Source of the DNA: Vitrella brassicaformis CCMP3155
Taxonomy: Eukaryota > Protista > Chromerida
DNA: 64,000 nucleotides
Direction: 5' to 3'
Assembly (NCBI GenBank): GCA_001179505.1
Contig: CDMY01000887.1
Coordinates: 179,293-243,292, forward strand
Shown here piece by piece: positions 26,596-63,611 of this stretch (its first letter is position 1; each line of letters begins with the position of its first letter). Under the pieces are notes generated by a model. That model was not told the origin of the DNA. It was given only the letters and a program-made list of their open reading frames with translations, and searched no databases. A program made the translations under genes and the position numbers.

Positions 26596-29557
26596 ATGAT
26601 GTCGGCGAGCAAAGATCCCAGTTTGACGTACTGTGACAGTCCCCTTGAGCAGCCCCGCATGAGCAGCAGCTCTCCTTCGCCGTCGCTGCAGTACGATGAC
26701 TATGTGCCGGCTCACGACGTCCTCTGCTGCGTCCTCAAGACCAGCCACGACAAGCTCTCGGCCCTCGTCGAGCCTTTCCTCCGCTGCCTCAGGAGGAAAG
26801 ACGTGCTTGTGGAGGAGCTTGTCGGCGCACCGTGGGGCAGCCGCGCGTTTGTGCTGGACGCTTCGGACGACGTGCTGTTCGAGTACTGTAAGAAATCGAA
26901 TGAGCAGCTCACGGCAGTGCTGATGAAGCGGAGGGGCTTCACACCCGCAGAGCGGCTGAGACTGATTTGGGCTCTGCTGCGGAGTGTGCAGCTGCCGCCA
27001 TCGGCGGAGTGGAAGGCGCTGAACCAGACCAAGAATGCCGGAAACAGTGTGGACGATGTGCATCCGTCGCTGCTGCAGGAGTGTGTGAAGGGGGGCTTCA
27101 TCGAGGAGGTCAGCCGAGGAGGGAGGAGCATTCAAAGCGCCATTTTCATTGTTGTGGTCCTGTGCGGTTTGTCGGTTCTGGCAGTAGATCACGCCTTTGC
27201 ACTGTCCCCGATGGCGCGCAGAGGTCGAAGAGCAGTGGATAGGTCAGAAAGAATCCCGCAAACACCCACACAAGGAAGTCACGTTGAGTGTCCTCTCTCT
27301 TAGCGTCTCTCCTGGTGTTGGGTGGCAGCGATGCGTTGCTGCGGCGGCTGGCCTCCTACTTTGGCGAGAAACTTGGAGTGTATTTTGCCTTCATGCAGTG
27401 CTACACCCGGTGGTTGGCCGTGCCTGCACTGGCGGGCACCGGCATATTCTTGGCGCAGACACTGGGCTACTGCAATCAGGTGAGCGAGTGTGTGTGCGGG
27501 CATCATACGGGAGGCGGCCGCATGTGGCATGTGTGTGTCTCTGAGTGAAGGTCGGTGCAATTGTGATGTGGGTCGTTCTGTCCTTGTGGTCGACGCTGTT
27601 CATCGAAGCGGGATGGTGAGGCGGGCACACACAATGCGCAGGGCTGTCTCGCAATGGTGCGTGCCTGCCTGTGTCTTTTTGTGTGTGTGTGTGTGTGTGT
27701 GTTGTGAAGGCAGCGTCGTCTCGAGAAAATGAAGGTGTCGTGGGATCTGTGGCGGTATGACGATGCACAAAAGTGAGTCAGCGTCACAGAGGGGATAGGG
27801 CTGCGAATTAGTTGGCTGGCTGGCTGCCACGTTGGTCCGCTTGGCTGCTGCATGCAGAAATGCTGGTGACGTCCAAGACATGGCCGACTGCGCCCCTGCC
27901 ACAGACATAAATACTGGTCAAATATGCCGGCCAACAGACAGACAGACAGACAGACACGTCGTCTGTTCTCTCTTATCCCCTTGAATGTAGGCAATGAAGT
28001 GTTGCGACGGCTGCTGTGCCTTGCGCCGCTGGTTCTCTTTCTGGTGTTCAGTGTGGTGGTGCTGTGGGTGCTGCTGACCACACGCGACATGCTGCAGGAG
28101 TGGTTCGAAAGAGACCTGCAGCTGCCACGAGTGGTGGCCGCACAGGTGCCGGGCCTCCTCTTCACCGGATGCAAGATCGTGCTCGATGGAAAGTGAGTCG
28201 AGTCCAGACAAATCCTTGGGGCCTGATTTCTCTCTGGTACCGTGTGTGTGTTTGTGTGTGTAGGGGCAAGCAGGTGGCCGTTGCTCTGAACCGGGCTGAG
28301 ATGCACTATACGCCAAGCGCACGGGAGAACGCTCTGATAATGAAGCTGATGTTGTTCCAGTTCTTTGAGAACTTCCTTCTGTTGCTCTTCATCTGCTTCT
28401 GGCAACAGGCACTGAAATGAGACACGCTTATCATCCATTCATGCATCCCTTGTCTCGTGTCCATCTGCAGGATTTGGTGCAACTGTGTCTCGAGGTCACT
28501 CTTGACTTCAGCATGAGACAGGTGGGCAGATGATGCCTGCCGCGGGTATACATTTGTCGCATTTCCTCTTTTCCACTCTTCCTGAGCAGATGATCCAAAA
28601 CTCAACAGAGGTCGGCATACCCTTGTTCAACGGTCTCTTCAAGATCCTCATCGCTCCCATCCTCTACAGCCTCGTCAAAACACTCTCGGCTCCACTCACG
28701 GCCGTCAATCGTGCCATCACGGCCGTCTCACGCTGCTTTCTGGCCTATGTGCCCTTCGCCGAGAGGCTCTGGGGAATTTTCCTTGCCACGTCGCTGGGGG
28801 AGCAGCTCCAGGGGCTTATTGACAGCATCCCCACCTTGGAAGAGGTGTTCATGCAGGAGAGGCGCGCTGGCCTCATGCGAAAGAGCGTCACTTTCATCAA
28901 GAAAGACCGGCCGTCTGTGCTGCCGGCGATGCTGGACACACCTAAGGGCCAGCTGGGGATGGACGAACACGATCTCTTCGGCGAGTATGCAGGTGCGGTG
29001 CGCGAGAGACATAAGGTGATGCGTACAGGGACGGATGGATGGCATCGTGTGTGCACATTTCATCAGAGATAACGACCCAGTATTTTCTTCTGCTGGCCTT
29101 TGGGCCGTTTCTCCCTTTGACGGCGCTGTTCGCCTTTCTGAACACGGTGGTCGAGTTCCATCTCGACATATTCAAGACATCCAGACTCACAAAGGTGAGA
29201 TGAACGACCAGTGCCAAATGTCTCCTTCCTTCTGTCTCCTCCCCTCAGCGCCCGATGCCGTCAGTGGACACAATGGAGGTGTGGGTGAAGGTCTTCTCGG
29301 CGATATCCTTCGTGGCTGGCTCGATCAACATCTTCCTGCTGCTGGTGTTCCTTCCCGACCACTTCCTGCCTTCATCCCTCGTCATTGTGGGGCGGCGCGA
29401 GCCCATCGGGCCGTGTGGGCGTGTGCTGCTGGCGATAGTCCTTGAGCACTTCATGATATGCATGCAGGTGCTCATAGCCCTGAGCATCCCCCACCGGCCG
29501 GTGGAGGTGCAGATTGCACTGGACCGGGAGAAGAGGAGAAAGCACAAGAGGGCATAG
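26596..29557 (+). CDS. Anoctamin/TMEM16 family protein (ANO8/10-like)
   Basis: ITPLH, SYFGEKLGVYFAF..YTRWL, WSTLFIE, RENALIMKLMLFQF, DLFGEY, PLTALFAFLNTVVE, VWVKVF, VLEH. Confidence 0.92.
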
Positions 29558-30103
29558 GCAGCTGGGCAGGTGTGTGTTCAATGTGTGGCGACCTTGTGGT
29601 TTGTGGTGTGACATTGAAGGAGCGTGAACTGCAATGGACACAGCACAGTGTCACACTGCAATGCATATCACACTGAGGTGGAGCGAGGAGACAGTCTGGC
29701 ATATTAAGTGGCGAGTTTGCTGGCCAGAGAAATAAACTGAGCATCCGATCATCGTACCGTCGATCTTACAGGTTTTTCGATGTCTGCGTGCGTCACCTCG
29801 TGTGTTCTCTGTCGCGGCTGTTTCTCGATTTGATTCTTCCCCTCCATCCCAGGGCCCGTTACCGTAGCCAACCAACCACCATTCGCAGTTTGCGAGCTCC
29901 CGATCTCGGGGGGAAACTGTCATTAACCGTAACACTCGTCTGTGTGTCCGTGATACTCATACAAATACAGTCCCATCAGCACGCAGAGTCAAACAGGCTC
30001 AAGGGGAGGAGGGATCAATCCCCGCCCCATCAGCACACCCCAGTCCCGCAAACCCTCCCCTCCCTCCCCCACGCAGACAGAAGCTAGTCGCTCCCGATCT
30101 CTG

Positions 30104-33100
30104 ATGAGTGGATCTGTCGATGAGATTATACCACAGGGATTTTTCCATGATGACTCGGAGGATCAGCGGAAGCTGTGCGCCAGGTACTCGCTTCAATGAA
30201 ACGAGTACTGAGCAATTTGGCGTACTTGTCGTTTCGCAGGTCGGTGATTGGGCTGCCTCCCCCTCAGCCGCTCACACCAGTGCCATTGGTGCGGCTTTTG
30301 TGGGTCAGCCCGGTATCAGCGTCGGTGTTCCAGTCGCCGAGTCGTTGGATGACTGCACCAATGGCGAGCATCCAGAACAGGTGCACATGATCGGACGAGG
30401 TGCACTCGTTCCTGTCTGGTATCATGTGGGTGGCCGCCTGTGTGTGCGTTCAGTATCCTTACCCCTGCAATGGCTTGCCGCCCTTCCCCCTGCCCTTCTC
30501 CCATATGGAGCCGGCCGAATCGTCACGGCATCGTGCGGAGTCCCTCCCGCCATCCAATCGTGAAGCAAGAGCAAGGACCTCACAGTCCTCTCAGGTGAAA
30601 CACTCTTACGAATACAGATGTTCTGTGAGCATGTGCTGACGCTCTGCATGTTTGCGTTCAGGTGTCCAAGAGGGCAGGGGAGGTCACAATTGGCGAGCGG
30701 CTGCAACTCGTGAATGAATTCGAGAGGCGGAAGAAGGACGGCGACACTATCAGCATGCCGCAGTTTGAGAAGGAAAAGGGAATCACTCACGGGAGGTTCA
30801 AGCAGTGGTACGCTGCTGTCAAAAGGCAGAAGGAGGCCGGCACCCAGGTGATCGACCCGACCAAGAAACGCAGCAGGGAACCGAAGTACCTGCCGATTGA
30901 GGACGAGATGCGCGAATGGATGGCCGGCCATGATGACCACGCCAATGTCCCCCCCAAGGCCATCAGGACCAAGGCCATGGAGGTCGCCGCTCGGCTGGGA
31001 ATCGGTGACTTCTCGGCCAGCGACTCCTGGATCAAGAGGTTCAAGATACGATACCAACAGGTAAGAGCGTACCACCATTTAACGGAATTGCGATGGGAGA
31101 ATGAGGCCTCTCTGTGATGCGCTGCAGGGTCAGGCGCTTGACGAGTCAGCTACGGCGGATGGATTCATCGGGCAAGTCGGCCTCAGCCGACGGGTGAACG
31201 CACTCAATAACCCGAGAAGATTGCCACTGAGCAGTTTCTTTGCTACCTGGTTGGCTGCAGACCACCAGCTCTGCAGCAGACGAAGACGCGGTGGACCAGC
31301 AGTCTGGGCACTCGCGCGTCAACACCGTGAGCGTAAGCCAGGCTACGCTAGCGAGCTCATCTTGTTGGCTAGCATCTTATTTCGCGATCTCGCCACATTT
31401 GTCTTCAGATGGTGCCGTCCACGAGCAGATTGACAAACGAGAGGTCGCCCGCAAAGATCCAGAGGAGCGACGAACGCAGCCATAGAGAGGGTCCGCCGTC
31501 TCTGGTCAGTTGAAGATAGGATGGACAAATAGAAAGATATCGCTCTCTGCAACGGTTCTTCAGGCGGCGTCATCGGAGCACACTCATCTTGACCTCGCTG
31601 ACTCGGTTGTCAGCTCCGTGAAACGAAGGGGCGCTTCTGAAGAGGACGATGCTGACCAGAATGGTGGCCCTGCTGCCGCGTTATCGACTGTCGACTCGCT
31701 TGGCCTGGAACTGCCGAAGACGCGCGTCCATCGTCGTGACGACAGCGCAAGCAGCTCGGCAGCCCGTGCGACAACGAAGATGGTGTGTCGTCGCGTCCGA
31801 GTCAGCCACAGAGAGGTGATGAGTTTGTTGTTTGCAGGAGAAGCTGATGTCCGTCGAGACGGTGACCAAGGAACGAAACCGAAATGATGCTGCCGAACGA
31901 ATGAAGGTCAGGACACACCAAAGCAATGAGTCACCACGTCGACTTCATTCGTACTCCTTTGTGTGGACCGACTATCCGTTTGTTTCATTCAGCGTGTCGT
32001 GGCGGAGGTCGTGGACAAGTCGACTTCGGTGGATCTAGTGACCATGATGGACTGCACGGGGTCAATGAGCGGCTGGATCTCTCAGGCCCAACTCACACTC
32101 AACTCCATCATCACCGACCTGCAGGTGCGCTTCTCGCTACCCGACACCTCACCTGTGCGTCCCCAAGCACCTCTCTGTGTTTGTCCTCAGTTGTCCTATC
32201 CCCATATGCGCTTCCGTGTGGGTTTCGTCGGCTATCGCGACTTCTGCGACGGGGCTGGCCGGCTGGCCATCGCGCCGCTGACCGAGGATGTCCTCGCCGT
32301 CAAGAACATGATCTGCCGCCAGAGTGCCACGGGCGGCGGCGGTGAACCCGAGGATGTGGCGGGCGCTCTCAAGGCTGTGGGTGATATGGCGTGGGAGGCC
32401 ATGACGCGAGTCGTCATCCACGTTGGCGACGCCCCGCCGCACGGGTTGAAATACCATTATGGTCTCAACGACAGGTGAGCAGGCTACACAACGATGCATA
32501 CACGTCCTTCTGGTCCTCTTATGTCTGTCTGCATTAGTCACCCTGGTGGCGATCCATACGGCCTTCGCATCGAGCATCTGATGCGTGGTTTCCGCATGAT
32601 GGGTCTCGACTACTGCTTCATCAAGATCAACAGATCCACCGATAGAATGATCGATATCATGCGCGCTGCCTACGACGACCCGGCCACGTTGCACCAGGTC
32701 CGCGTCGAGAACCTCGGCGGAGACACCAGCGGCTTCAAGAGCTTCATCGTGCGATCGGTGAGTGCATCAGGGGCTGAACAGACTGAATGTCTCCGACTTT
32801 CCATCTGACCCTTCAGGTGTCTGAGAGCGTTTCTTCGTCTGTCAAGCGCATGTCGATGGCCACAAGAACTCGCCGCAATCACAGCTCCATGTTCATGGGC
32901 CCAACCAGCGGTAAGTGCGATCGAGAAGGACGGAGAGGGAGGGGACATCCTCTCCCTGTGGCTGGTAGGCTGGTTGGCTTCCATTGCCGAGGATACGCCT
33001 TTAATCACGCGGACCTTGTCGCTTGACACCAGTGCTCCGGCGTGGGACTCATTTACGTCCAAGGTGATGACAGAGAGAAAATCCGACACGGCTATGTGTG

Positions 33101-34781
33101 TGTATTTGTGTGTGAGCAGGAAGAGGCTCATCGCTATACTTACCACCTGGTGCTCGAGCGCACGAAGAACTGGAACCTCCCTGAGATGATCGTCACAAAG
33201 CAGCAGTCGTATTTGCACATCGAGGAGAGGCCGTTTGCGAAGGGAGAGATGCGGTACGCCTTTTACATGAAGGAGCGCATGCTGGACCTCAAGAGGGTGG
33301 GCAGGGAGAGAGAGGGGATGGATGGGGAAAACGGACGCCGCATTTGTAATGTGTCTCTTTCTAAGGTGGCCAAGTTGCCGATAGAGTCCTGCCGTGGTGG
33401 CGAGGAGCTGCGCAAGGACGTGTTGGCCGACATAGAGACGCAGGCCATCAGCAAGGCACTGGCGAAGGTGTTCAACGAGGCGCTCCTCAAGAAGGGCGTC
33501 AAACGCATGATCGACTTCATCGACGTCTGTAAGTCAATCACCAACACACACGGCACACATGACTGACACGTCTTTCATGTGGTATGTGTCAGCTGTGTAT
33601 GAGTTGCCGTCTCGCGGCGAGAGCGAGCGTTGGGTGACCGTCGAGCCCTTCATGGAGGGGCGCTACCAGAAGTACAATAACAATGACGGGTGGGTCAGCT
33701 TGTCCGAGCTGACTCAGGGACAGCTGGCGCAGAGCCAGCTGGCGCAGGCCTTCTCCCACTGGACCTGGCACTTTACGGGGGGCGAGCTAATGGTGAGCAT
33801 CAAGGGCAAAACGGAGGGAGGGAGGGAGGGAGGCCTGAATGTGTCCCGAATTTTCCTGTGACGTTTAGGTGGTGGACATTCAGGGCGTCAACAACATCTA
33901 CATCGACCCACAGATCCATTCAAAGGTCAGGCCAGAGAGCTGGACGCCTCAATGGCACACCTGTCGCTGTGTGGTGTCTTCAGGACATGAATTGTTATGG
34001 CCTCGGCAACCTGGGCGAGGAGGGCATGGGCAAGTTCTTCGCATCCCACACGTGCAACGAGGTCTGTGTGCGCCTCGGGCTGGACCACCCCAACCCCACG
34101 GCGGTTGAGCAGTTTTTGCGCACATTCAAGACTTTTCTTCGTGCCTCTACCGAAGGACCTCAGCCTCGAGGGGAGCGCCAAGCAGGTCGAGCTGCAGATC
34201 TCGTGTGAGCTGTGCGGGTCGATATTCGACGTGAGCATGGCAAATGAGGGAGAGGGGAGGCGAGTGCGATGCACTCACTGGTCATCCGTGTGTCGGTCTC
34301 TGTGTGTGTCGCAGGTCAACGGATCGCGTTACCTGTCGTTCCGAGAGAAGGGCCGTGACGTCTACTGCCCCAGGTGCGAGGACCGGCTACGCCAGGAGGT
34401 ACCCAAGAAGGTCAAGTGCGACCGCTGCCACAAGCCCTTCACGTACCCGGCCTCGTGGTACCTCTACAAAGGCATGAAGGAGCCAACCACATGCAGCAGG
34501 TGCACCTGCAAGAGGACAGAAGGCCCGGAGATAGGTTGTGGGTATGCCTGTCTGTGCGAATGTGCGTGTCCGTCTGCAGGGGGTCTGAGCAGAGTGTCGG
34601 CGTGTATTTTGGCGAGCAGACCTTCAGGCAGAGGGCTGCAAATTTCATCAGAGCATACTTCAATCTACTTCCACGTGAGTGAGTGTCGTGTTTCCCGTGG
34701 ACGTCTTGTGTTGCTGGGCGGAGGGAGCAGTGAGTGACATTGTGTATCTGCCTACGGTGATGCTGTGTTTGGGGGCAGTAG
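30104..34781 (+). CDS. CENP-B/pogo HTH - vWA - alpha-kinase - zinc-ribbon fusion protein (start within 30104-30147 and last exon are approximate)
   Basis: HTH exon 30662-31060. Five consecutive phase-0 GT-AG introns lead to the vWA domain (DLVTMMDCTGSM, VGFVGYRD, EDVAGAL, HVGDAPPHG), then the alpha-kinase (PFAKGEMRYAF, VEPFMEGRYQKYNNNDG, AFSHWTW, VVDIQGV..IDPQIH, GNLGEEGMGKFFASHTCNEVC) and four CxxC motifs. Confidence 0.88.
30662..31060 (+). mobile_element. Domesticated pogo/Tigger (Tc5/CENP-B) transposase DNA-binding exon; no DDE domain
   Basis: TIGERLQLV..EKEKGITHGRFKQW (first HTH) and KKRSREPKYLPIEDEMREW..VPPKAIRTKAMEVAARLGIGDFSASDSWIKRFKIRY (CENP-B/Tc5 HTH, including the F.AS..W..RFK.R signature). 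Confidence 0.85.
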
Positions 34782-60556: not shown

Positions 60557-63500
60557 ATGGATCCTTCCGCAAGCCTCGAGCTCATGGACTCTTCCTCCTC
60601 CATGGCATCCTCCTACCGTGAGGACGGAAGCGGCACTCCATCGTTTGGTCAGGAGGGCCACCAGCACCAGTACCAGCACCAGTACCAGCACCAGCAGCAG
60701 CTCTGCCTGCAGCAGCTCGAGCTTGAGCAGGATGACGAAGAGGACACTCTGACCCGACAGCAGTCGATGGTGAGCAATGCTCTCCTCTCTTCTTTCTTTC
60801 TGTGGTCGGTTGGTCGGTTGGGTGGCGTGTGTTTCTATGTTTTTGCGGTCGGTTGGGTGGCGTGTGTCGTACCAGGAACAGGCAACACAGGAGATGCGGA
60901 TGCGTCTTGAGGAATCGGCCAAGAGGGAGTTGGCCCTGCAGACCGCTCAGGCGCAGATGAGGGTCAGCACATCACTCGCACGCAGAGCTTTTTTCCCACG
61001 AACCAAATACCTACCTCTGCATGTCCATGCCATTCAGAGTGTCGTGTCCAAGGTTGTGGACAAAGCCAACTCGGTCGATCTCGTGACCATGATGGACTGC
61101 ACCGGCAGCATGACGCCCTACATGCGAGAGGCGAAGCGCACCCTGACCCATATCATCGACGAACTCAAGGTAGCCGCACGACGCTCCACCACACTAATCA
61201 TCGACAACCGTCACACCTGTTGTGCTGCATTCTCTCAGGACTCGAACCCCAACATGCGCTTCCGCGTCGGATTCGTCGGCTACCGCGACTTCGAGGGCGG
61301 AAGTAAGCGGCTGGCCATCTGGCCGCTCACTGACGACATCGCATCCGTGACGGACTTCATCGCTCGGCAGAAGGCGTTTGGCGGAGGCGGCGATGGGCCT
61401 GAGGATGTGGCGGGGGCCCTAAAGGCGGTGGGCGACATGCAGTGGCAGGCTCTGACCAAGGCAGTCATTCATGTGGGCGACGCCCCGCCCCACGGCCTAC
61501 AGTACCACGACAACACCTGCCCGGGGCACGGCGATGAGTAAGGGGAGAGACCGCAGAGGCCGACGTAAACATCGCGTGTTTGTTTGTTTGTGTGTGTGTG
61601 TACGTCAGTTACCCTGGTGGCGATCCGAATGGCCTTCGCATCGAGCAGCTGATGCAAGGATTCCGCGCCCTCGGTCTGGACTACTGCTTCGTCAGGATCA
61701 CCAAGCACACCGGCAAGATGATCGAGGTCATGCGTGCCGCCTACGACGACCCGGCCACGTTGCGCCAGGTCCAGGTGGAGCACCTCGGGGGCGACATCGC
61801 CGCCTTCAAGCGCATCGTCGTCCGCTCGGTAGGCAGGCAAACAAACAAACAGGCCGCAGCCACCGCGCCGGTGTGTTTGCATGTTTGATGTGTGGTGCTC
61901 CGTCTTTTTGTGCAGGTGTCTAAGTCCATCTCGAACTCGGTCAAGCGAATGTCGCAGCCGACGCCCGTCCGCCGTCGCAGCTCCATCATGGGACCCAACA
62001 GTGGCTGGCTCGCCTCCATTGCTGAGGACAAGCCCTCTCAGCCGCGCAAGCTTCGCGTCGACAAGAGCCCTCCTAACTGGGACGCTCTCAATGGGACGGT
62101 CAGCGCCAGAAGGAGTGGAGTGTGGTGTGTCCATCATCCTTTCTCTCATCTCTGTCTCTCTGTGTGCAGGAAGAGGACGCCTGCCGGTACACGTACCACG
62201 TCGTGCTGGACAGTAAGGGCACCTGGAAGGCCCCCGAGATCACTGAGACCAAGCAGGACTCGCGTGTGCAGCTGCAGAAGGCCCCCTTTGCCGAGGGCGC
62301 CATGCGGTACGCCTTCTACATGAAGGAGCATTTCCTCGACCTGAAGAGGGTGGGCAGGGAGACAGAGAGTGAGGGAGGGAGAAACGGACGGCGCATTTTT
62401 GTTGTGTGTCGCTCTCTCAGGTGGCCAAGTTGCCGATAGAGTCCCACCGTGGTGGCGAGAAGCTGCGCAAAGACGTGTTGGCTGACATGGAGACGCAGGC
62501 CGTCAGCAAGGCACTGGCAAAGGTGTTCAACGAGGCGCTCCTCAAGAAAGGCATCAAACGCATGATCGACTTCATCGACGTCTGTAAGTCAATGAACGGC
62601 AGAGAGGTTGACCTGTACTCACGTGGAGTGCTGTGGAGTGCTGTACTGTCATATGAACCTTTCAGCTGTGTACGAGTTGCCGTCTCGCGGCGAGAGCGAG
62701 CGCTGGGTGGCAGTCGAGCCCTTCGTCGAGGGACGGTACGAGAAGTACACCAACAACAACGGCTGGGTTAGCAACGAGACCGGCAGCCAGCTGGCACAGG
62801 CCTTCTCCCACTGGAGCTGGGAACACACTGGCGGAGAGCTGATGGTATGATGGATAGCAGGCAGGCAGACAGAGAGCCAGTGCAGACAGCATCCTACCCT
62901 GCTTGTTGCTCGCCGCCTCGCCTGTCGTACAGGTGGTTGACATTCAGGGCGTCAACAACATCTACACCGACCCACAGATCCACTCAAAGGTCAGGCGAGA
63001 GAGCTGGGCGCCTCAATGGCACACCTGTCGCTGTGTGGTGTCTTCAGGACATGACTCGTTATGGCCACGGCAACCTGGGCGAGGAGGGCATGGGCAAGTT
63101 CTTCGCCTCCCACACGTGCAACGAGGTCTGCGTGCGCCTCGGGCTGGACCACCCCAACCCCACGGCGGCCGAGCGAATGATGCGCACATTCAAGAGTGAG
63201 ACCACACACGAGCTTTGACCGGCAGCATGATAAGGCCATCTTGCTGCAGATGCGATGACGCGTGTGCCGGAGGATCTGAGCCTCAGGTGCCGTGGCAAGC
63301 GAGTGGAGCTGCAGACGTCTTGCGAACTGTGCGGCGCCATATTCGATGTATGTGAGGAGACAGCCATCACGATGCACACTGCAGTCAGTCGTGTCGGTGT
63401 CTCGTGCTGACAGGTGGATGTATCGCGTTACTTGGACTTCCGCAGGCAGGGCCGCGACGTCTACTGCGCCACTTGTGAGAAACGCATGGCCCAGGAGGTG

Positions 63501-63611
63501 ACCAAGGCCAGGTGCGCCAAGTGCGGCAACCAGTTCACCTTCTCGTCCTTCTGGTACCGCTGCAAGGGCGTCAAGGAGCCAACCACGCACACAAGGTGCC
63601 GGGCCAAGTAG
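60557..63611 (+). CDS. vWA - alpha-kinase - zinc-ribbon protein (VwkA-like architecture), paralog of 30104-34781 without the HTH
   Basis: Low-complexity S/Q/H N-terminus and short coiled coil; DLVTMMDCTGSM, HVGDAPPHG; PFAEGAMRYAF, KYTNNNGW, AFSHWSW, VVDIQGV..TDPQIH, HTCNEVC; CELC, CATC, CAKC, HTRC. Confidence 0.95.

What the first reader, a model, noticed from the sequence alone, without database searches (positions are those of the whole stretch)
30662..34510. Transposase DNA-binding domain captured by a vWA-alpha-kinase: candidate DNA-binding atypical kinase
Exon 30662-31060 encodes the two-HTH pogo/Tigger/CENP-B DNA-binding region. It is joined to the vWA exon (31993) by five consecutive canonical phase-0 introns with open exons (GQALDE.., TTSSAAD.., MVPSTS.., AASSEH.., EKLMSV..), and the two upstream exons are also phase 0. 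No DDE domain or TIRs follow. CENP-B-type domestications are well known, but I know of no fusion to an eEF2K/MHCK-family alpha-kinase. A chromatin- or transposon-end-targeted kinase, possibly in genome defence, is the inference.
Basis: partly seen in the sequence, partly recalled or inferred. Interest (0 to 1): 0.82.

Follow-up and report, generated by a model that had tools for sequence, protein, structure and literature searches.

The report
CENP-B-type HTH cassette joined to vWA-alpha-kinase
In the alga Vitrella brassicaformis, the front half of a gene from a large family with a transposase-derived DNA-binding domain sits directly upstream of, and in the same reading phase as, a vWA/alpha-kinase gene; the sequence would encode a DNA-binding kinase seen nowhere else, but no RNA yet shows that the two halves are spliced together.

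Summary
Exon 30662-31060 encodes a complete CENP-B-type two-HTH DNA-binding domain. Five open phase-0 exons and six GT-AG introns link it to a vWA + alpha-kinase gene. No DDE domain or TIRs are present. The public Augustus model of Vitrella brassicaformis CCMP3155 (P0001, 1052 aa) is the same fusion.

The interpretation needs correcting. The kinase did not capture the HTH from a transposon. The HTH is one of at least 43 diverged, intact cassette exons of a Vitrella-specific host gene family, usually fused to TLDc and also to SH3, RING, OHA or AP2. This locus carries that family's whole 5' module, placed in front of one of four vWA-alpha-kinase paralogs. The other three have no HTH.

The HTH exon is under purifying selection: dN/dS is 0.13-0.25 and it keeps 22 of 22 family-conserved residues. 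RNA-like contigs confirm splicing only from 32757 onward. None covers 31173-31960, so the junction is unproven (about 55% fusion, 30% two merged genes).

The kinase catalytic motifs are intact. A +1 frame break separates the kinase from its C-terminal zinc ribbon, and the one RNA contig there retains the annotated rescue intron.

No other protein in the databases has this architecture. Earlier notes of this scan report the same cassette fused to other partners elsewhere in this genome.

The parts
30120..30594 (+). Annotated N-terminal exons of P0001: 30120-30239, 30309-30380 and 30454-30594. The third carries a family-conserved RxRxxSLPP-type motif just before the HTH. The first exon and start codon are doubtful.
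   Evidence: Exon map of P0001. Alignment with paralog N-termini. The codon score of the first exon is negative in all frames.
30662..31060 (+). Cassette exon of 133 codons, phase 0-0, encoding a complete CENP-B-type two-HTH DNA-binding domain.
   Evidence: Pfam HTH_Tnp_Tc5. Family profile against 1HLV, E=5.5e-10. Fold match TM 0.63. At least 43 paralogous exons with the same boundaries. dN/dS 0.13-0.25 and 22/22 conserved positions kept.
31128..31504 (+). Three family linker exons: 31128-31193, 31261-31332 and 31409-31504. The last encodes the conserved motif RLTNERSPAKIQRSDERSHREGPPS. DNA homology to HTH-TLDc paralogs ends at 31510-31515, just past its donor.
   Evidence: tblastn and blastn to paralog loci. 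The motif is found in 11 family proteins, always internal.
31564..31906 (+). Junction exons 5 (31564-31782) and 6 (31838-31906), with introns of 59, 55 and 86 nt around them. The sequence matches neither parent family significantly. Exon 6 sits where the paralog's coiled-coil exon lies, before the vWA exon.
   Evidence: No blastn or BLASTP similarity. Positional comparison with P0087. The codon score is best in the predicted frame but inconclusive, p about 0.11. No RNA contig covers this stretch.
31993..32757 (+). vWA domain exons 31993-32124, 32191-32474 and 32538-32757, with the MIDAS-like DCTGS motif.
   Evidence: 38% identity over 213 aa to the vWA region of a vWA-alpha-kinase. Sub-threshold VWA_4/VWA_2. 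An RNA-like contig lies on 31991-32121.
32817..33063 (+). Two linker exons (32817-32910 and 32969-33063) between the vWA and kinase domains.
   Evidence: Spliced RNA-like contigs give joints at 32757/32817, 32910/32969 and 33063/33120.
33120..34207 (+). Alpha-kinase domain exons: 33120-33296, 33366-33528, 33593-33792, 33869-33925 and 33984 onward. If read colinearly, as in the RNA contig, the frame stops at TGA 34205-34207.
   Evidence: Pfam Alpha_kinase positions 1-185, 177 bits. Alignment to MHCK-A 3LKM conserves DIQG, DPQIH, GLGNLG and HxCNxxC. Introns confirmed by RNA-like contigs. Stop codon.
34112..34163 (+). A 52-nt intron present only in the annotation. It is needed to bring the zinc ribbon into frame, and the one RNA contig covering it retains it. 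Relative to the paralog's spliced sequence, this gene has +1 nt here.
   Evidence: Exon map. X1 record 5 is colinear over 34075-34230. DNA alignment with two paralogs. Paralog intron and frames.
34150..34682 (+). C-terminal zinc-ribbon exons (34150-34230 and 34315-34499, four CxxC pairs) and the last exon (34580-34682), in a different frame from the kinase domain.
   Evidence: Sub-threshold zinc-ribbon Pfam hits. Spliced in RNA at 34230/34315 and about 34499/34580. dN/dS 0.36 against the paralog.

Best explanation
This is a chimeric gene of Vitrella brassicaformis, made by exon shuffling between two host gene families.

**5' half (about 30120-31504).** This is a full copy of the N-terminal module of a Vitrella-specific family. 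It holds a short N-terminal region with an RxRxxS-L-P-P motif, a CENP-B-type two-HTH DNA-binding exon of pogo/Tc5 ancestry, and three linker exons that end in a conserved RLTNER...HREGPPS motif with a phase-0 donor. In the family this module normally precedes TLDc domains.

**3' half.** Here the module is instead followed, through two unique short exons, by the phase-0 acceptor of a VwkA-type vWA + alpha-kinase gene. That gene is one of four paralogs, and the other three have their own N-termini and no HTH.

**Shown.**
- The domain identities.
- The family membership of the 5' module.
- Purifying selection on the HTH exon, the vWA domain and the kinase domain.
- Intact kinase catalytic motifs.
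- In-phase canonical mini-introns with no intergenic space.
- Transcription and splicing of the kinase part.

**Inferred.**
- One mRNA joins both halves.
- The protein is then an alpha-kinase tethered to DNA, or carried into the nucleus, by the HTH module. The module would act as a targeting cassette that this lineage attaches to different effector domains.
- The protein probably ends at 34207 without the zinc ribbon, unless the 52-nt intron is sometimes spliced.
For: - **Annotation.** The public Augustus model P0001 has exactly this structure. Augustus was run with RNA-seq intron hints (PMC4501334).
- **Exon chain.** All six linking introns are GT..AG, 55-86 nt long, with pyrimidine-rich CAG acceptors and phase 0, like the RNA-confirmed introns of 56-88 nt.
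- **No intergenic space.** Only 55-59 nt separate the exons at the junction, so there is no room for a terminator plus promoter.
- **Family module.** The 5' module is homologous to HTH-TLDc paralogs from the upstream exon through exon 4. No TLDc or other C-terminal domain exists on this contig. In the other ten family proteins that carry it, the motif exon is always followed by further exons.
- **Selection.** The HTH exon has dN/dS 0.13-0.25 at dS about 1 and keeps 22/22 positions that are at least 90% conserved. Against the paralog, vWA has dN/dS 0.26 and the kinase 0.30.
- **Exon 5.** It has no ATG before its last codon, and its best codon score is in the predicted frame.
- **Leads from earlier scan notes, not tested here.** They report the same cassette spliced to UPF1 with RNA support, and fused to PARG, AP2 and OHA.
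Against: - **No RNA at the junction.** No RNA contig covers 31173-31960, and none was shown bridging 31060 to 31128 in the two RNA-like runs. Depth falls towards the 5' end (15.9, 7.5, 5.8, 4.3), so this absence is weak evidence either way.
- **Chance compatibility.** Phase compatibility of the two halves has a 1 in 3 chance. Exon 5 being open is unremarkable: 4-9% in Markov models and 20-30% in real sequence. Its codon score is inconclusive.
- **Alternative starts.** ATGs at 31780 and 31847 could start a kinase-only protein of paralog-like size.
- **Predictor behaviour.** Augustus can merge neighbouring genes. The same model contains a 52-nt intron that the RNA contig contradicts and a doubtful first exon.
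- **Frame break.** The break before the zinc ribbon may mean that the kinase copy is degenerating.
Confidence: 0.55

Rival explanations
1. There are two adjacent genes on the same strand that the gene predictor merged. The first is an HTH-only member of the family; if intron 4 is not removed, it ends just after exon 4 as ...PPSLVS followed by a stop at 31511-31513. The second is an ordinary vWA-alpha-kinase that starts at ATG 31780 or 31847. On this reading no DNA-binding kinase exists.
For: - RNA-like contigs cover the kinase exons but none of 31173-31960.
- A stop codon follows two codons after the exon-4 donor.
- In-frame ATGs lie at the end of exon 5 and in exon 6.
- The three other kinase paralogs have no HTH.
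- Short HTH-only models are annotated in the family.
- The model has other doubtful features.
Against: - The gap between the last family exon and the first kinase-type exon is 333 nt (31505-31837), and only 55 nt if exon 5 is counted.
- The exon-4 donor is conserved, and in the other ten family proteins that carry the motif the exon is internal.
- Well-formed mini-introns flank exons 5 and 6.
- The 3' bias of the RNA contigs explains the missing 5' coverage equally well.
Confidence: 0.3
2. A chimeric transcript exists but is an evolutionary by-product. On this reading the HTH cassette, with its promoter and splice donor, has landed in front of a duplicated kinase gene that is now decaying, and the product has no selected function as a DNA-tethered kinase.
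For: - A +1 frame break lies between the kinase domain and its conserved zinc ribbon, and the RNA contig retains the only intron that could rescue it.
- Expression of this copy is lower than that of the paralog: depth 3-16 against 17.
- An earlier scan note reports an analogous HTH-UPF1 chimera with a one-base frame break (not tested here).
Against: - The vWA and kinase domains show dN/dS 0.26-0.30 with all catalytic motifs intact.
- The HTH exon keeps every family-conserved residue.
- The break removes only the C-terminal zinc ribbon.
- The zinc-ribbon frame is still open with all CxxC pairs (dN/dS 0.36), so the break is recent or is bypassed.
Confidence: 0.1
3. This is the first reader's version: an active or recently active pogo/Tigger transposon inserted next to the kinase gene, and its DNA-binding exon was captured directly. 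The transposon's TIRs would then be the likely binding target.
For: The domain is of pogo/Tc5/CENP-B type.
Against: - The exon is flanked by host-family exons shared with at least 43 paralogs that are 43-70% identical and carry no DDE.
- The genome has one DDE_1 locus, with no family HTH match on its contig.
- There are no TIRs.
- The nearest relatives outside Vitrella are animal CENPB-type proteins at about 30% identity.
Confidence: 0.03

Closest known systems
Dictyostelium VwkA and the Tetrahymena vWA-alpha-kinases (alpha-kinase family; review PMC2827801)
   Same: - An N-terminal vWA domain is followed by a C-terminal alpha-kinase domain.
- The kinase aligns with MHCK-A and eEF2K structures at E about 1e-26, with the catalytic and zinc-binding motifs conserved.
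- It is 28-31% identical over 56-61% of its length to ciliate and other vWA-alpha-kinases.
   Different: - None of those proteins has a DNA-binding domain. [quoted passage not shown]
- This gene model adds about 420 N-terminal residues with a CENP-B-type HTH.
- A zinc ribbon follows the kinase domain, here out of frame.
CENP-B, S. pombe Abp1/Cbh1/Cbh2, and the Jerky/TIGD/POGK/POGZ proteins (domesticated pogo transposases)
   Same: - The N-terminal two-HTH DNA-binding domain has the same fold and sequence family (1HLV and 1IUF).
- It is host-encoded and under purifying selection.
   Different: - By my own knowledge, most of those proteins keep a (degenerate) DDE_1 region.
- The Vitrella family has lost it entirely and exists as a single 133-codon phase-0 cassette exon in at least 43 loci, combined with unrelated effector domains.
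Host-transposase fusion genes formed by exon shuffling (Cosby et al., bioRxiv 10.1101/2020.05.07.082677), and the F-box-HTH family of nematodes (PMC12062965)
   Same: - A transposase DNA-binding domain is joined by splicing to host domains.
- A multicopy host family reuses a transposase HTH.
   Different: - In the vertebrate cases the transposase domain is usually captured directly from an inserted transposon and joined to KRAB or SCAN-type regulatory domains.
- Here an already domesticated cassette is passed between host genes, and the partner is an atypical protein kinase.
- The one paper I searched for these terms (PMC12062965) mentions neither an alpha-kinase partner nor Vitrella.
Vitrella HTH-TLDc family (for example P0004, P0093, P0002; UniRef name 'Oxidation resistance protein')
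   Same: - The N-terminal module is the same: upstream motif exon, HTH exon (up to 70% identity), linker exons and the RLTNER...HREGPPS motif.
- The exon boundaries and phases are the same.
   Different: The TLDc domains are absent from this locus and contig and are replaced by vWA + alpha-kinase.

Membership tests
CENP-B/pogo-type DNA-binding domain | Second HTH (Pfam HTH_Tnp_Tc5) above the gathering score | tested here: met
   33.5 bits against a cut-off of 22.2, residues 79-131.
CENP-B/pogo-type DNA-binding domain | First HTH (CENP-B_N/psq type), so that the whole two-HTH domain is present | tested here: met
   Pfam gives no hit on this copy. The family profile aligns to residues 7-129 of 1HLV (E=5.5e-10). 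The AF2 model has six helices in two three-helix units, and its only strong fold match is 1HLV (TM 0.63).
CENP-B/pogo-type DNA-binding domain | Sequence-specific DNA binding | not testable with these tools
   Needs DAP-seq, EMSA or ChIP.
pogo/Tigger transposon | DDE_1 catalytic domain following the HTH | tested here: not met
   No DDE_1 in the window and one locus in the whole genome, on another contig.
pogo/Tigger transposon | Terminal inverted repeats flanking the element | tested here: not met
   Only one weak pair (72%, 29 nt) in 28500-32500, and it does not flank the module.
Alpha-kinase family | Full-length match to Pfam Alpha_kinase | tested here: met
   177 bits, profile positions 1-185 of 185.
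Alpha-kinase family | Catalytic and zinc-binding residues: DxQG, DPQ, the Gly-rich GLGNLG loop, and the His/Cys ligands | tested here: met
   The alignment to MHCK-A 3LKM/3PDT conserves afsH, vvDiQGv, DPQIH, GLGNLG and HxCNxxC. The catalytic Lys was seen by eye only, in the motif VAK.
VwkA-type vWA-alpha-kinase | vWA domain N-terminal to the kinase domain | tested here: met
   38% identity over 213 aa to the vWA region of P0089, which carries PF00092/PF25106 + PF02816. The Pfam VWA_4/VWA_2 hits on this copy are below cut-off.
Host-transposase fusion gene | One mRNA joins the transposase-derived exon in frame to the host domains | tested here: inconclusive
   The exon chain is in phase and the annotated model joins them, but no RNA contig lies on 31173-31960.
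Host-transposase fusion gene | Purifying selection on the captured domain | tested here: met
   dN/dS 0.13-0.25 against the nearest paralogs; 22/22 conserved positions kept; no stops.
Vitrella HTH-TLDc family | C-terminal TLDc domain(s) | tested here: not met
   No TLDc match in the window by tblastn, and none among the 130 listed TLD matches in the genome lies on contig C887.

The most novel reading that the evidence does not exclude
The CENP-B-type HTH cassette is a lineage-specific targeting module. Vitrella attaches it by exon shuffling to many different effector domains: TLDc, alpha-kinase, and per annotation or earlier notes SH3/RING, AP2, OHA, PARG and UPF1. All would be brought to the same class of DNA sites. 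This gene would then be the first alpha-kinase tethered directly to DNA, phosphorylating chromatin-bound substrates as part of a modular genome-surveillance or chromatin-regulation toolkit.
Probability: 0.2. Interest if true: 0.8.

Novelty: new variant of a known kind. Interest (0 to 1): 0.5.

Why it matters
If the fusion is real, it is the first alpha-kinase with its own DNA-binding domain. It is also a clear protist example of a domesticated transposase domain being reused as a mobile exon cassette between host genes, rather than captured afresh from a transposon.

The wider pattern is probably more important than this single gene. It consists of at least 43 intact, diverged CENP-B-type cassette exons with no DDE, in a genome with very few transposons, joined to TLDc, kinase and other effector domains. 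That pattern gives a testable system for how new multidomain regulators are assembled in the closest free-living relatives of apicomplexan parasites.

If the two halves are separate genes, the finding reduces to an annotation merge next to an interesting gene family.

Tried and rejected
**Searches and tests that gave no usable answer**
- RNA test of the junction. The single read-laying run gave spliced RNA-like contigs only from 31991 onward. Nothing lay on 31173-31960. The small depth on 30582-30778 probably comes from better-expressed paralogs. The test is inconclusive.
- Search for short protein fragments that bridge the junction. None was found. The database evidently holds no ORFs from these runs, so the blank is uninformative.
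- Origin of exon 5. BLASTP against paralog linkers and against the N-terminus of P0087 gave E of 0.28 or worse. blastn gave no hit beyond 31515. Its origin is undetermined.
- Codon-usage score of exon 5. It falls between the null and coding distributions, with p about 0.11.
- ORF openness as evidence. I rejected it after seeing that 20-30% of 73-codon windows are open in this genome.
- TLDc remnant in the window. None was found.
- The single DDE_1 locus. Pfam finds no HTH in its neighbouring ORFs, but introns could hide one.
- Rfam scan of the 184-bp repeat upstream. Nothing meaningful was found.
- Literature. No paper links Vitrella to CENP-B/pogo or TLDc, or an alpha-kinase to a transposase domain.

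**Readings considered and rejected**
- Dead transposon fragment: rejected by dN/dS and by the conserved exon boundaries.
- Direct capture from a transposon: rejected because the flanking exons are shared with the host family.


Full report
**Source**

The window is G000:C887:179293-243292 of a 72,700,666-bp assembly in 1064 scaffolds. That is exactly the size given for Vitrella brassicaformis CCMP3155 in the genome paper (PMC4501334). The database names the window's proteins as Vitrella brassicaformis CCMP3155. Vitrella is a free-living photosynthetic relative of Apicomplexa.

**Checking the observation**

- Exon 30662-31060 is open, 133 codons long, and bounded by an AG acceptor and a GTAAGA donor.
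- Pfam recognises HTH_Tnp_Tc5 on residues 79-131 (33.5 bits, cut-off 22.2).
- A profile of 21 family members matches the entire CENP-B DNA-binding domain (1HLV residues 7-129, E=5.5e-10) and S. pombe Abp1.
- An AlphaFold model (pLDDT 82, six helices) has 1HLV as its only strong structural match (TM 0.63).
- Five open exons follow: 31128-31193, 31261-31332, 31409-31504, 31564-31782 and 31838-31906. All are multiples of three, separated by six GT..AG introns of 55-86 nt, up to the vWA exon 31993-32124.
- The assembled protein carries a full Alpha_kinase domain (177 bits). Its DIQG, DPQIH, GLGNLG and HxCNxxC motifs align with MHCK-A.
- The vWA region is 38% identical to that of other vWA-alpha-kinases.
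- There is no DDE_1 in the window and one in the whole genome. There are no flanking inverted repeats.

The same model already exists publicly as P0001, 1052 aa, listed in UniRef as an 'Alpha-type protein kinase domain-containing protein' with PF02816 and PF03221 on record.

**What the HTH exon really is**

The genome holds at least 43 matches to this exon.
- The best 30 are 43-70% identical at the protein level and have no stop codon.
- Nearly all of the 29 paralogous ones show the same exon boundaries: a CAG acceptor before the domain, and ...QQ followed by GT after it.
- They are old, diverged, intact paralogs, not transposon copies.

The annotated proteins that contain these exons map exactly onto the loci. 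Their Pfam partners are as follows:

| Partner domain | Proteins |
|---|---|
| TLDc (the usual partner) | P0002, P0003, P0004, P0007, P0009, P0011, P0018, P0020, P0021 |
| SH3 | P0006 |
| SH3 + RING | P0012 |
| OHA | P0013 |
| AP2 | P0023 |

- TLDc itself is hugely expanded, with at least 130 matches.
- The nearest relatives outside Vitrella are animal CENPB-type proteins at about 30% identity.
- The genome paper mentions neither TLD nor CENP, and no paper found links Vitrella to this family.

**The 5' half of this gene is the family's whole N-terminal module**

Alignment with HTH-TLDc paralogs shows homology in four parts:
- the exon before the HTH, which carries an RxRxxSLPP-type motif;
- the HTH exon itself;
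- exon 2 (ADGFIG...LSR);
- exon 3 and exon 4. Exon 4 carries a 25-residue motif, RLTNER...HREGPPS, found in 11 family proteins, where it is always internal.

At the DNA level, similarity to paralog loci runs through exons 2-4 and stops at 31510-31515, a few bases past the exon-4 donor.

Homology to the other vWA-alpha-kinases starts at 31987, the vWA exon. The genome has only four alpha-kinase loci. These are this one, a paralog at window 60557-63608 (P0087, 63% identical), C321 and C525. None of the other three has an HTH.

The 470 nt in between (exons 5 and 6) match neither family significantly. Exon 6 does sit where the paralog has a short coiled-coil exon before its vWA exon.

The event was therefore a junction between the 5' half of an HTH-family gene and the 3' two-thirds of a vWA-alpha-kinase gene. 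It was not capture from a transposon.

**Selection**

| Region | Compared with | dN/dS | dS |
|---|---|---|---|
| HTH exon | five nearest paralogs | 0.13-0.25 | about 1 |
| vWA | P0087 | 0.26 | 0.88 |
| Kinase domain | P0087 | 0.30 | 0.42 |
| Zinc ribbon | P0087 | 0.36 | 0.77 |

The HTH exon also keeps all 22 positions that are at least 90% conserved in the family. These are pairwise averages over both lineages. A branch-specific test could not be run.

**Is it one transcript?**

This is the weak point.
- Two RNA-like runs (spliced contigs) confirm eight of the downstream introns in this gene's own contigs: 32758-32816, 32911-32968, 33064-33119, 33297-33365, 33793-33868, 33926-33983, 34231-34314 and about 34500-34579. 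Intron 33529-33592 appears only in a contig that comes from the 62-kb paralog. A further contig lies on the vWA exon 31991-32121.
- Neither run has any contig on 31173-31960. The small depth on parts of the HTH exon is best explained by paralog transcripts.
- Depth falls steadily towards the 5' end (15.9, 7.5, 5.8, 4.3), so the missing coverage fits either a 3' bias on a weakly expressed long mRNA or a separate upstream gene.
- Database searches for bridging fragments were blank and uninformative.

Arguments from sequence for the fusion:
- well-formed mini-introns of the local size;
- no room for an intergenic region;
- a conserved exon-4 donor that is internal in the other ten family proteins carrying the motif;
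- no alternative C-terminal domain for the HTH module on this contig;
- exon 5 has no ATG before its last codon, yet scores best in the predicted frame.

Arguments from sequence against:
- phase compatibility is a 1 in 3 event;
- an open 73-codon exon is common here;
- ATGs at 31780 and 31847 could start a kinase-only protein;
- the Augustus model contains at least one intron that RNA contradicts.

I put the fusion at about 55% and two merged genes at about 30%.

**Frame break before the zinc ribbon**

- Read colinearly, the kinase frame stops at TGA 34205-34207.
- The conserved four-CxxC zinc ribbon (34150-34230 and 34315-34499) lies in another frame.
- The paralog at 62 kb has a 53-nt GT..AG intron at this point. 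The C321 paralog reads straight through in frame. This gene has one base too many relative to the paralog's spliced sequence.
- The annotation restores the frame with a 52-nt intron (34112-34163). The only RNA contig there (X1 record 5, depth 15.9) is colinear over 34075-34230, while it is spliced at both downstream introns.
- The zinc-ribbon frame is still open and conserved, so the break is recent or is bypassed in part of the transcripts.
- The kinase domain itself is untouched.

**Mechanism proposed**

If the gene is fused, the protein is a VwkA-type kinase carrying an N-terminal CENP-B-type DNA-binding module. The most economical reading is that the module targets the kinase to DNA sites, or at least to the nucleus. 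The recurrence of the same module in front of TLDc, SH3/RING, OHA and AP2 suggests that it serves as a common targeting or regulatory cassette.

The conserved RxRxxS-L-P-P and RLTNER...HREGPPS motifs look like regulatory or docking peptides. That part is inference only. Nothing here identifies the DNA target or the substrates.

**Comparison with known systems**

- vWA-alpha-kinases are known from Dictyostelium (VwkA) and Tetrahymena, without DNA-binding domains (PMC2827801).
- Domesticated pogo DNA-binding domains are known from CENP-B, Abp1, Jerky, the POGK/POGZ class, and host-transposase fusions (10.1101/2020.05.07.082677).
- The combination found here occurs in no other protein of the searched collections.
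- The route by which it arose differs from the usual transposon-capture model, because an already domesticated cassette moved between host genes.

**Earlier notes of this scan**

The scan has noted the same cassette at other loci of this genome, fused to TLDc, AP2, OHA, PARG and UPF1. One follow-up reports RNA support for an HTH-UPF1 chimera whose helicase frame is broken by one base.
- My Pfam scans of paralogs agree for TLDc, AP2 and OHA.
- I did not test the PARG and UPF1 cases.
- The UPF1 case raises the prior that such chimeras are transcribed. It also supports the rival that some of them are decaying.

Noticed in passing
window 29908-30091: A 184-bp element lies 29 nt upstream of the annotated start codon. 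It is 99-100% identical to at least 40 scored copies (213 candidates) across the genome and is very deep in both DNA and RNA-like contigs. It looks like a very young, high-copy SINE/MITE-like repeat. It has no Rfam match.
   Followed up: partly
window 60557-63608: A second vWA-alpha-kinase paralog (P0087, 707 aa, 63% identical, no HTH) lies 26 kb downstream on the same strand and is more highly expressed in one RNA-like run. Its annotated model seems to read the first zinc-ribbon exon in the wrong frame. A 53-nt GT..AG intron after ...RTFK would join the kinase to PEDLSLRC...CELCG in frame.
   Followed up: partly
window 34100-34210: A +1 frame break lies between the alpha-kinase domain and the conserved zinc ribbon. 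The annotated 52-nt rescue intron (34112-34163) is retained in the only RNA contig that covers it.
   Followed up: yes
window 30520-30594 and paralog loci L016, L017, L025, L027, L029: A conserved basic motif of the type R-x-R-x-x-S-L-P-P sits just upstream of the HTH exon in many family members (here RHRAESLPP). It resembles a basophilic-kinase or 14-3-3-type site. This is by eye only.
   Followed up: no
whole genome (G000): The TLDc domain is massively expanded, with at least 130 six-frame matches, many in clusters on C802, C268, C242, C326 and C217. By contrast there is a single DDE_1 locus (C458:4113-4610).
   Followed up: partly
L026/L030 (G000:C238:39217-40380) and L033 (C908): Some family genes carry two CENP-B-type HTH domains in tandem within one open frame or gene model (P0003, P0002).
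   Followed up: no
window 30120-30239: The annotated first exon of P0001 has non-coding-like codon usage in all frames and ends in a sequence that looks like an acceptor (cgtttcgcag). The true 5' end and start codon of the gene are uncertain. An alternative ATG at 30104 opens a short frame resembling the paralog N-termini (MSGS...).
   Followed up: partly
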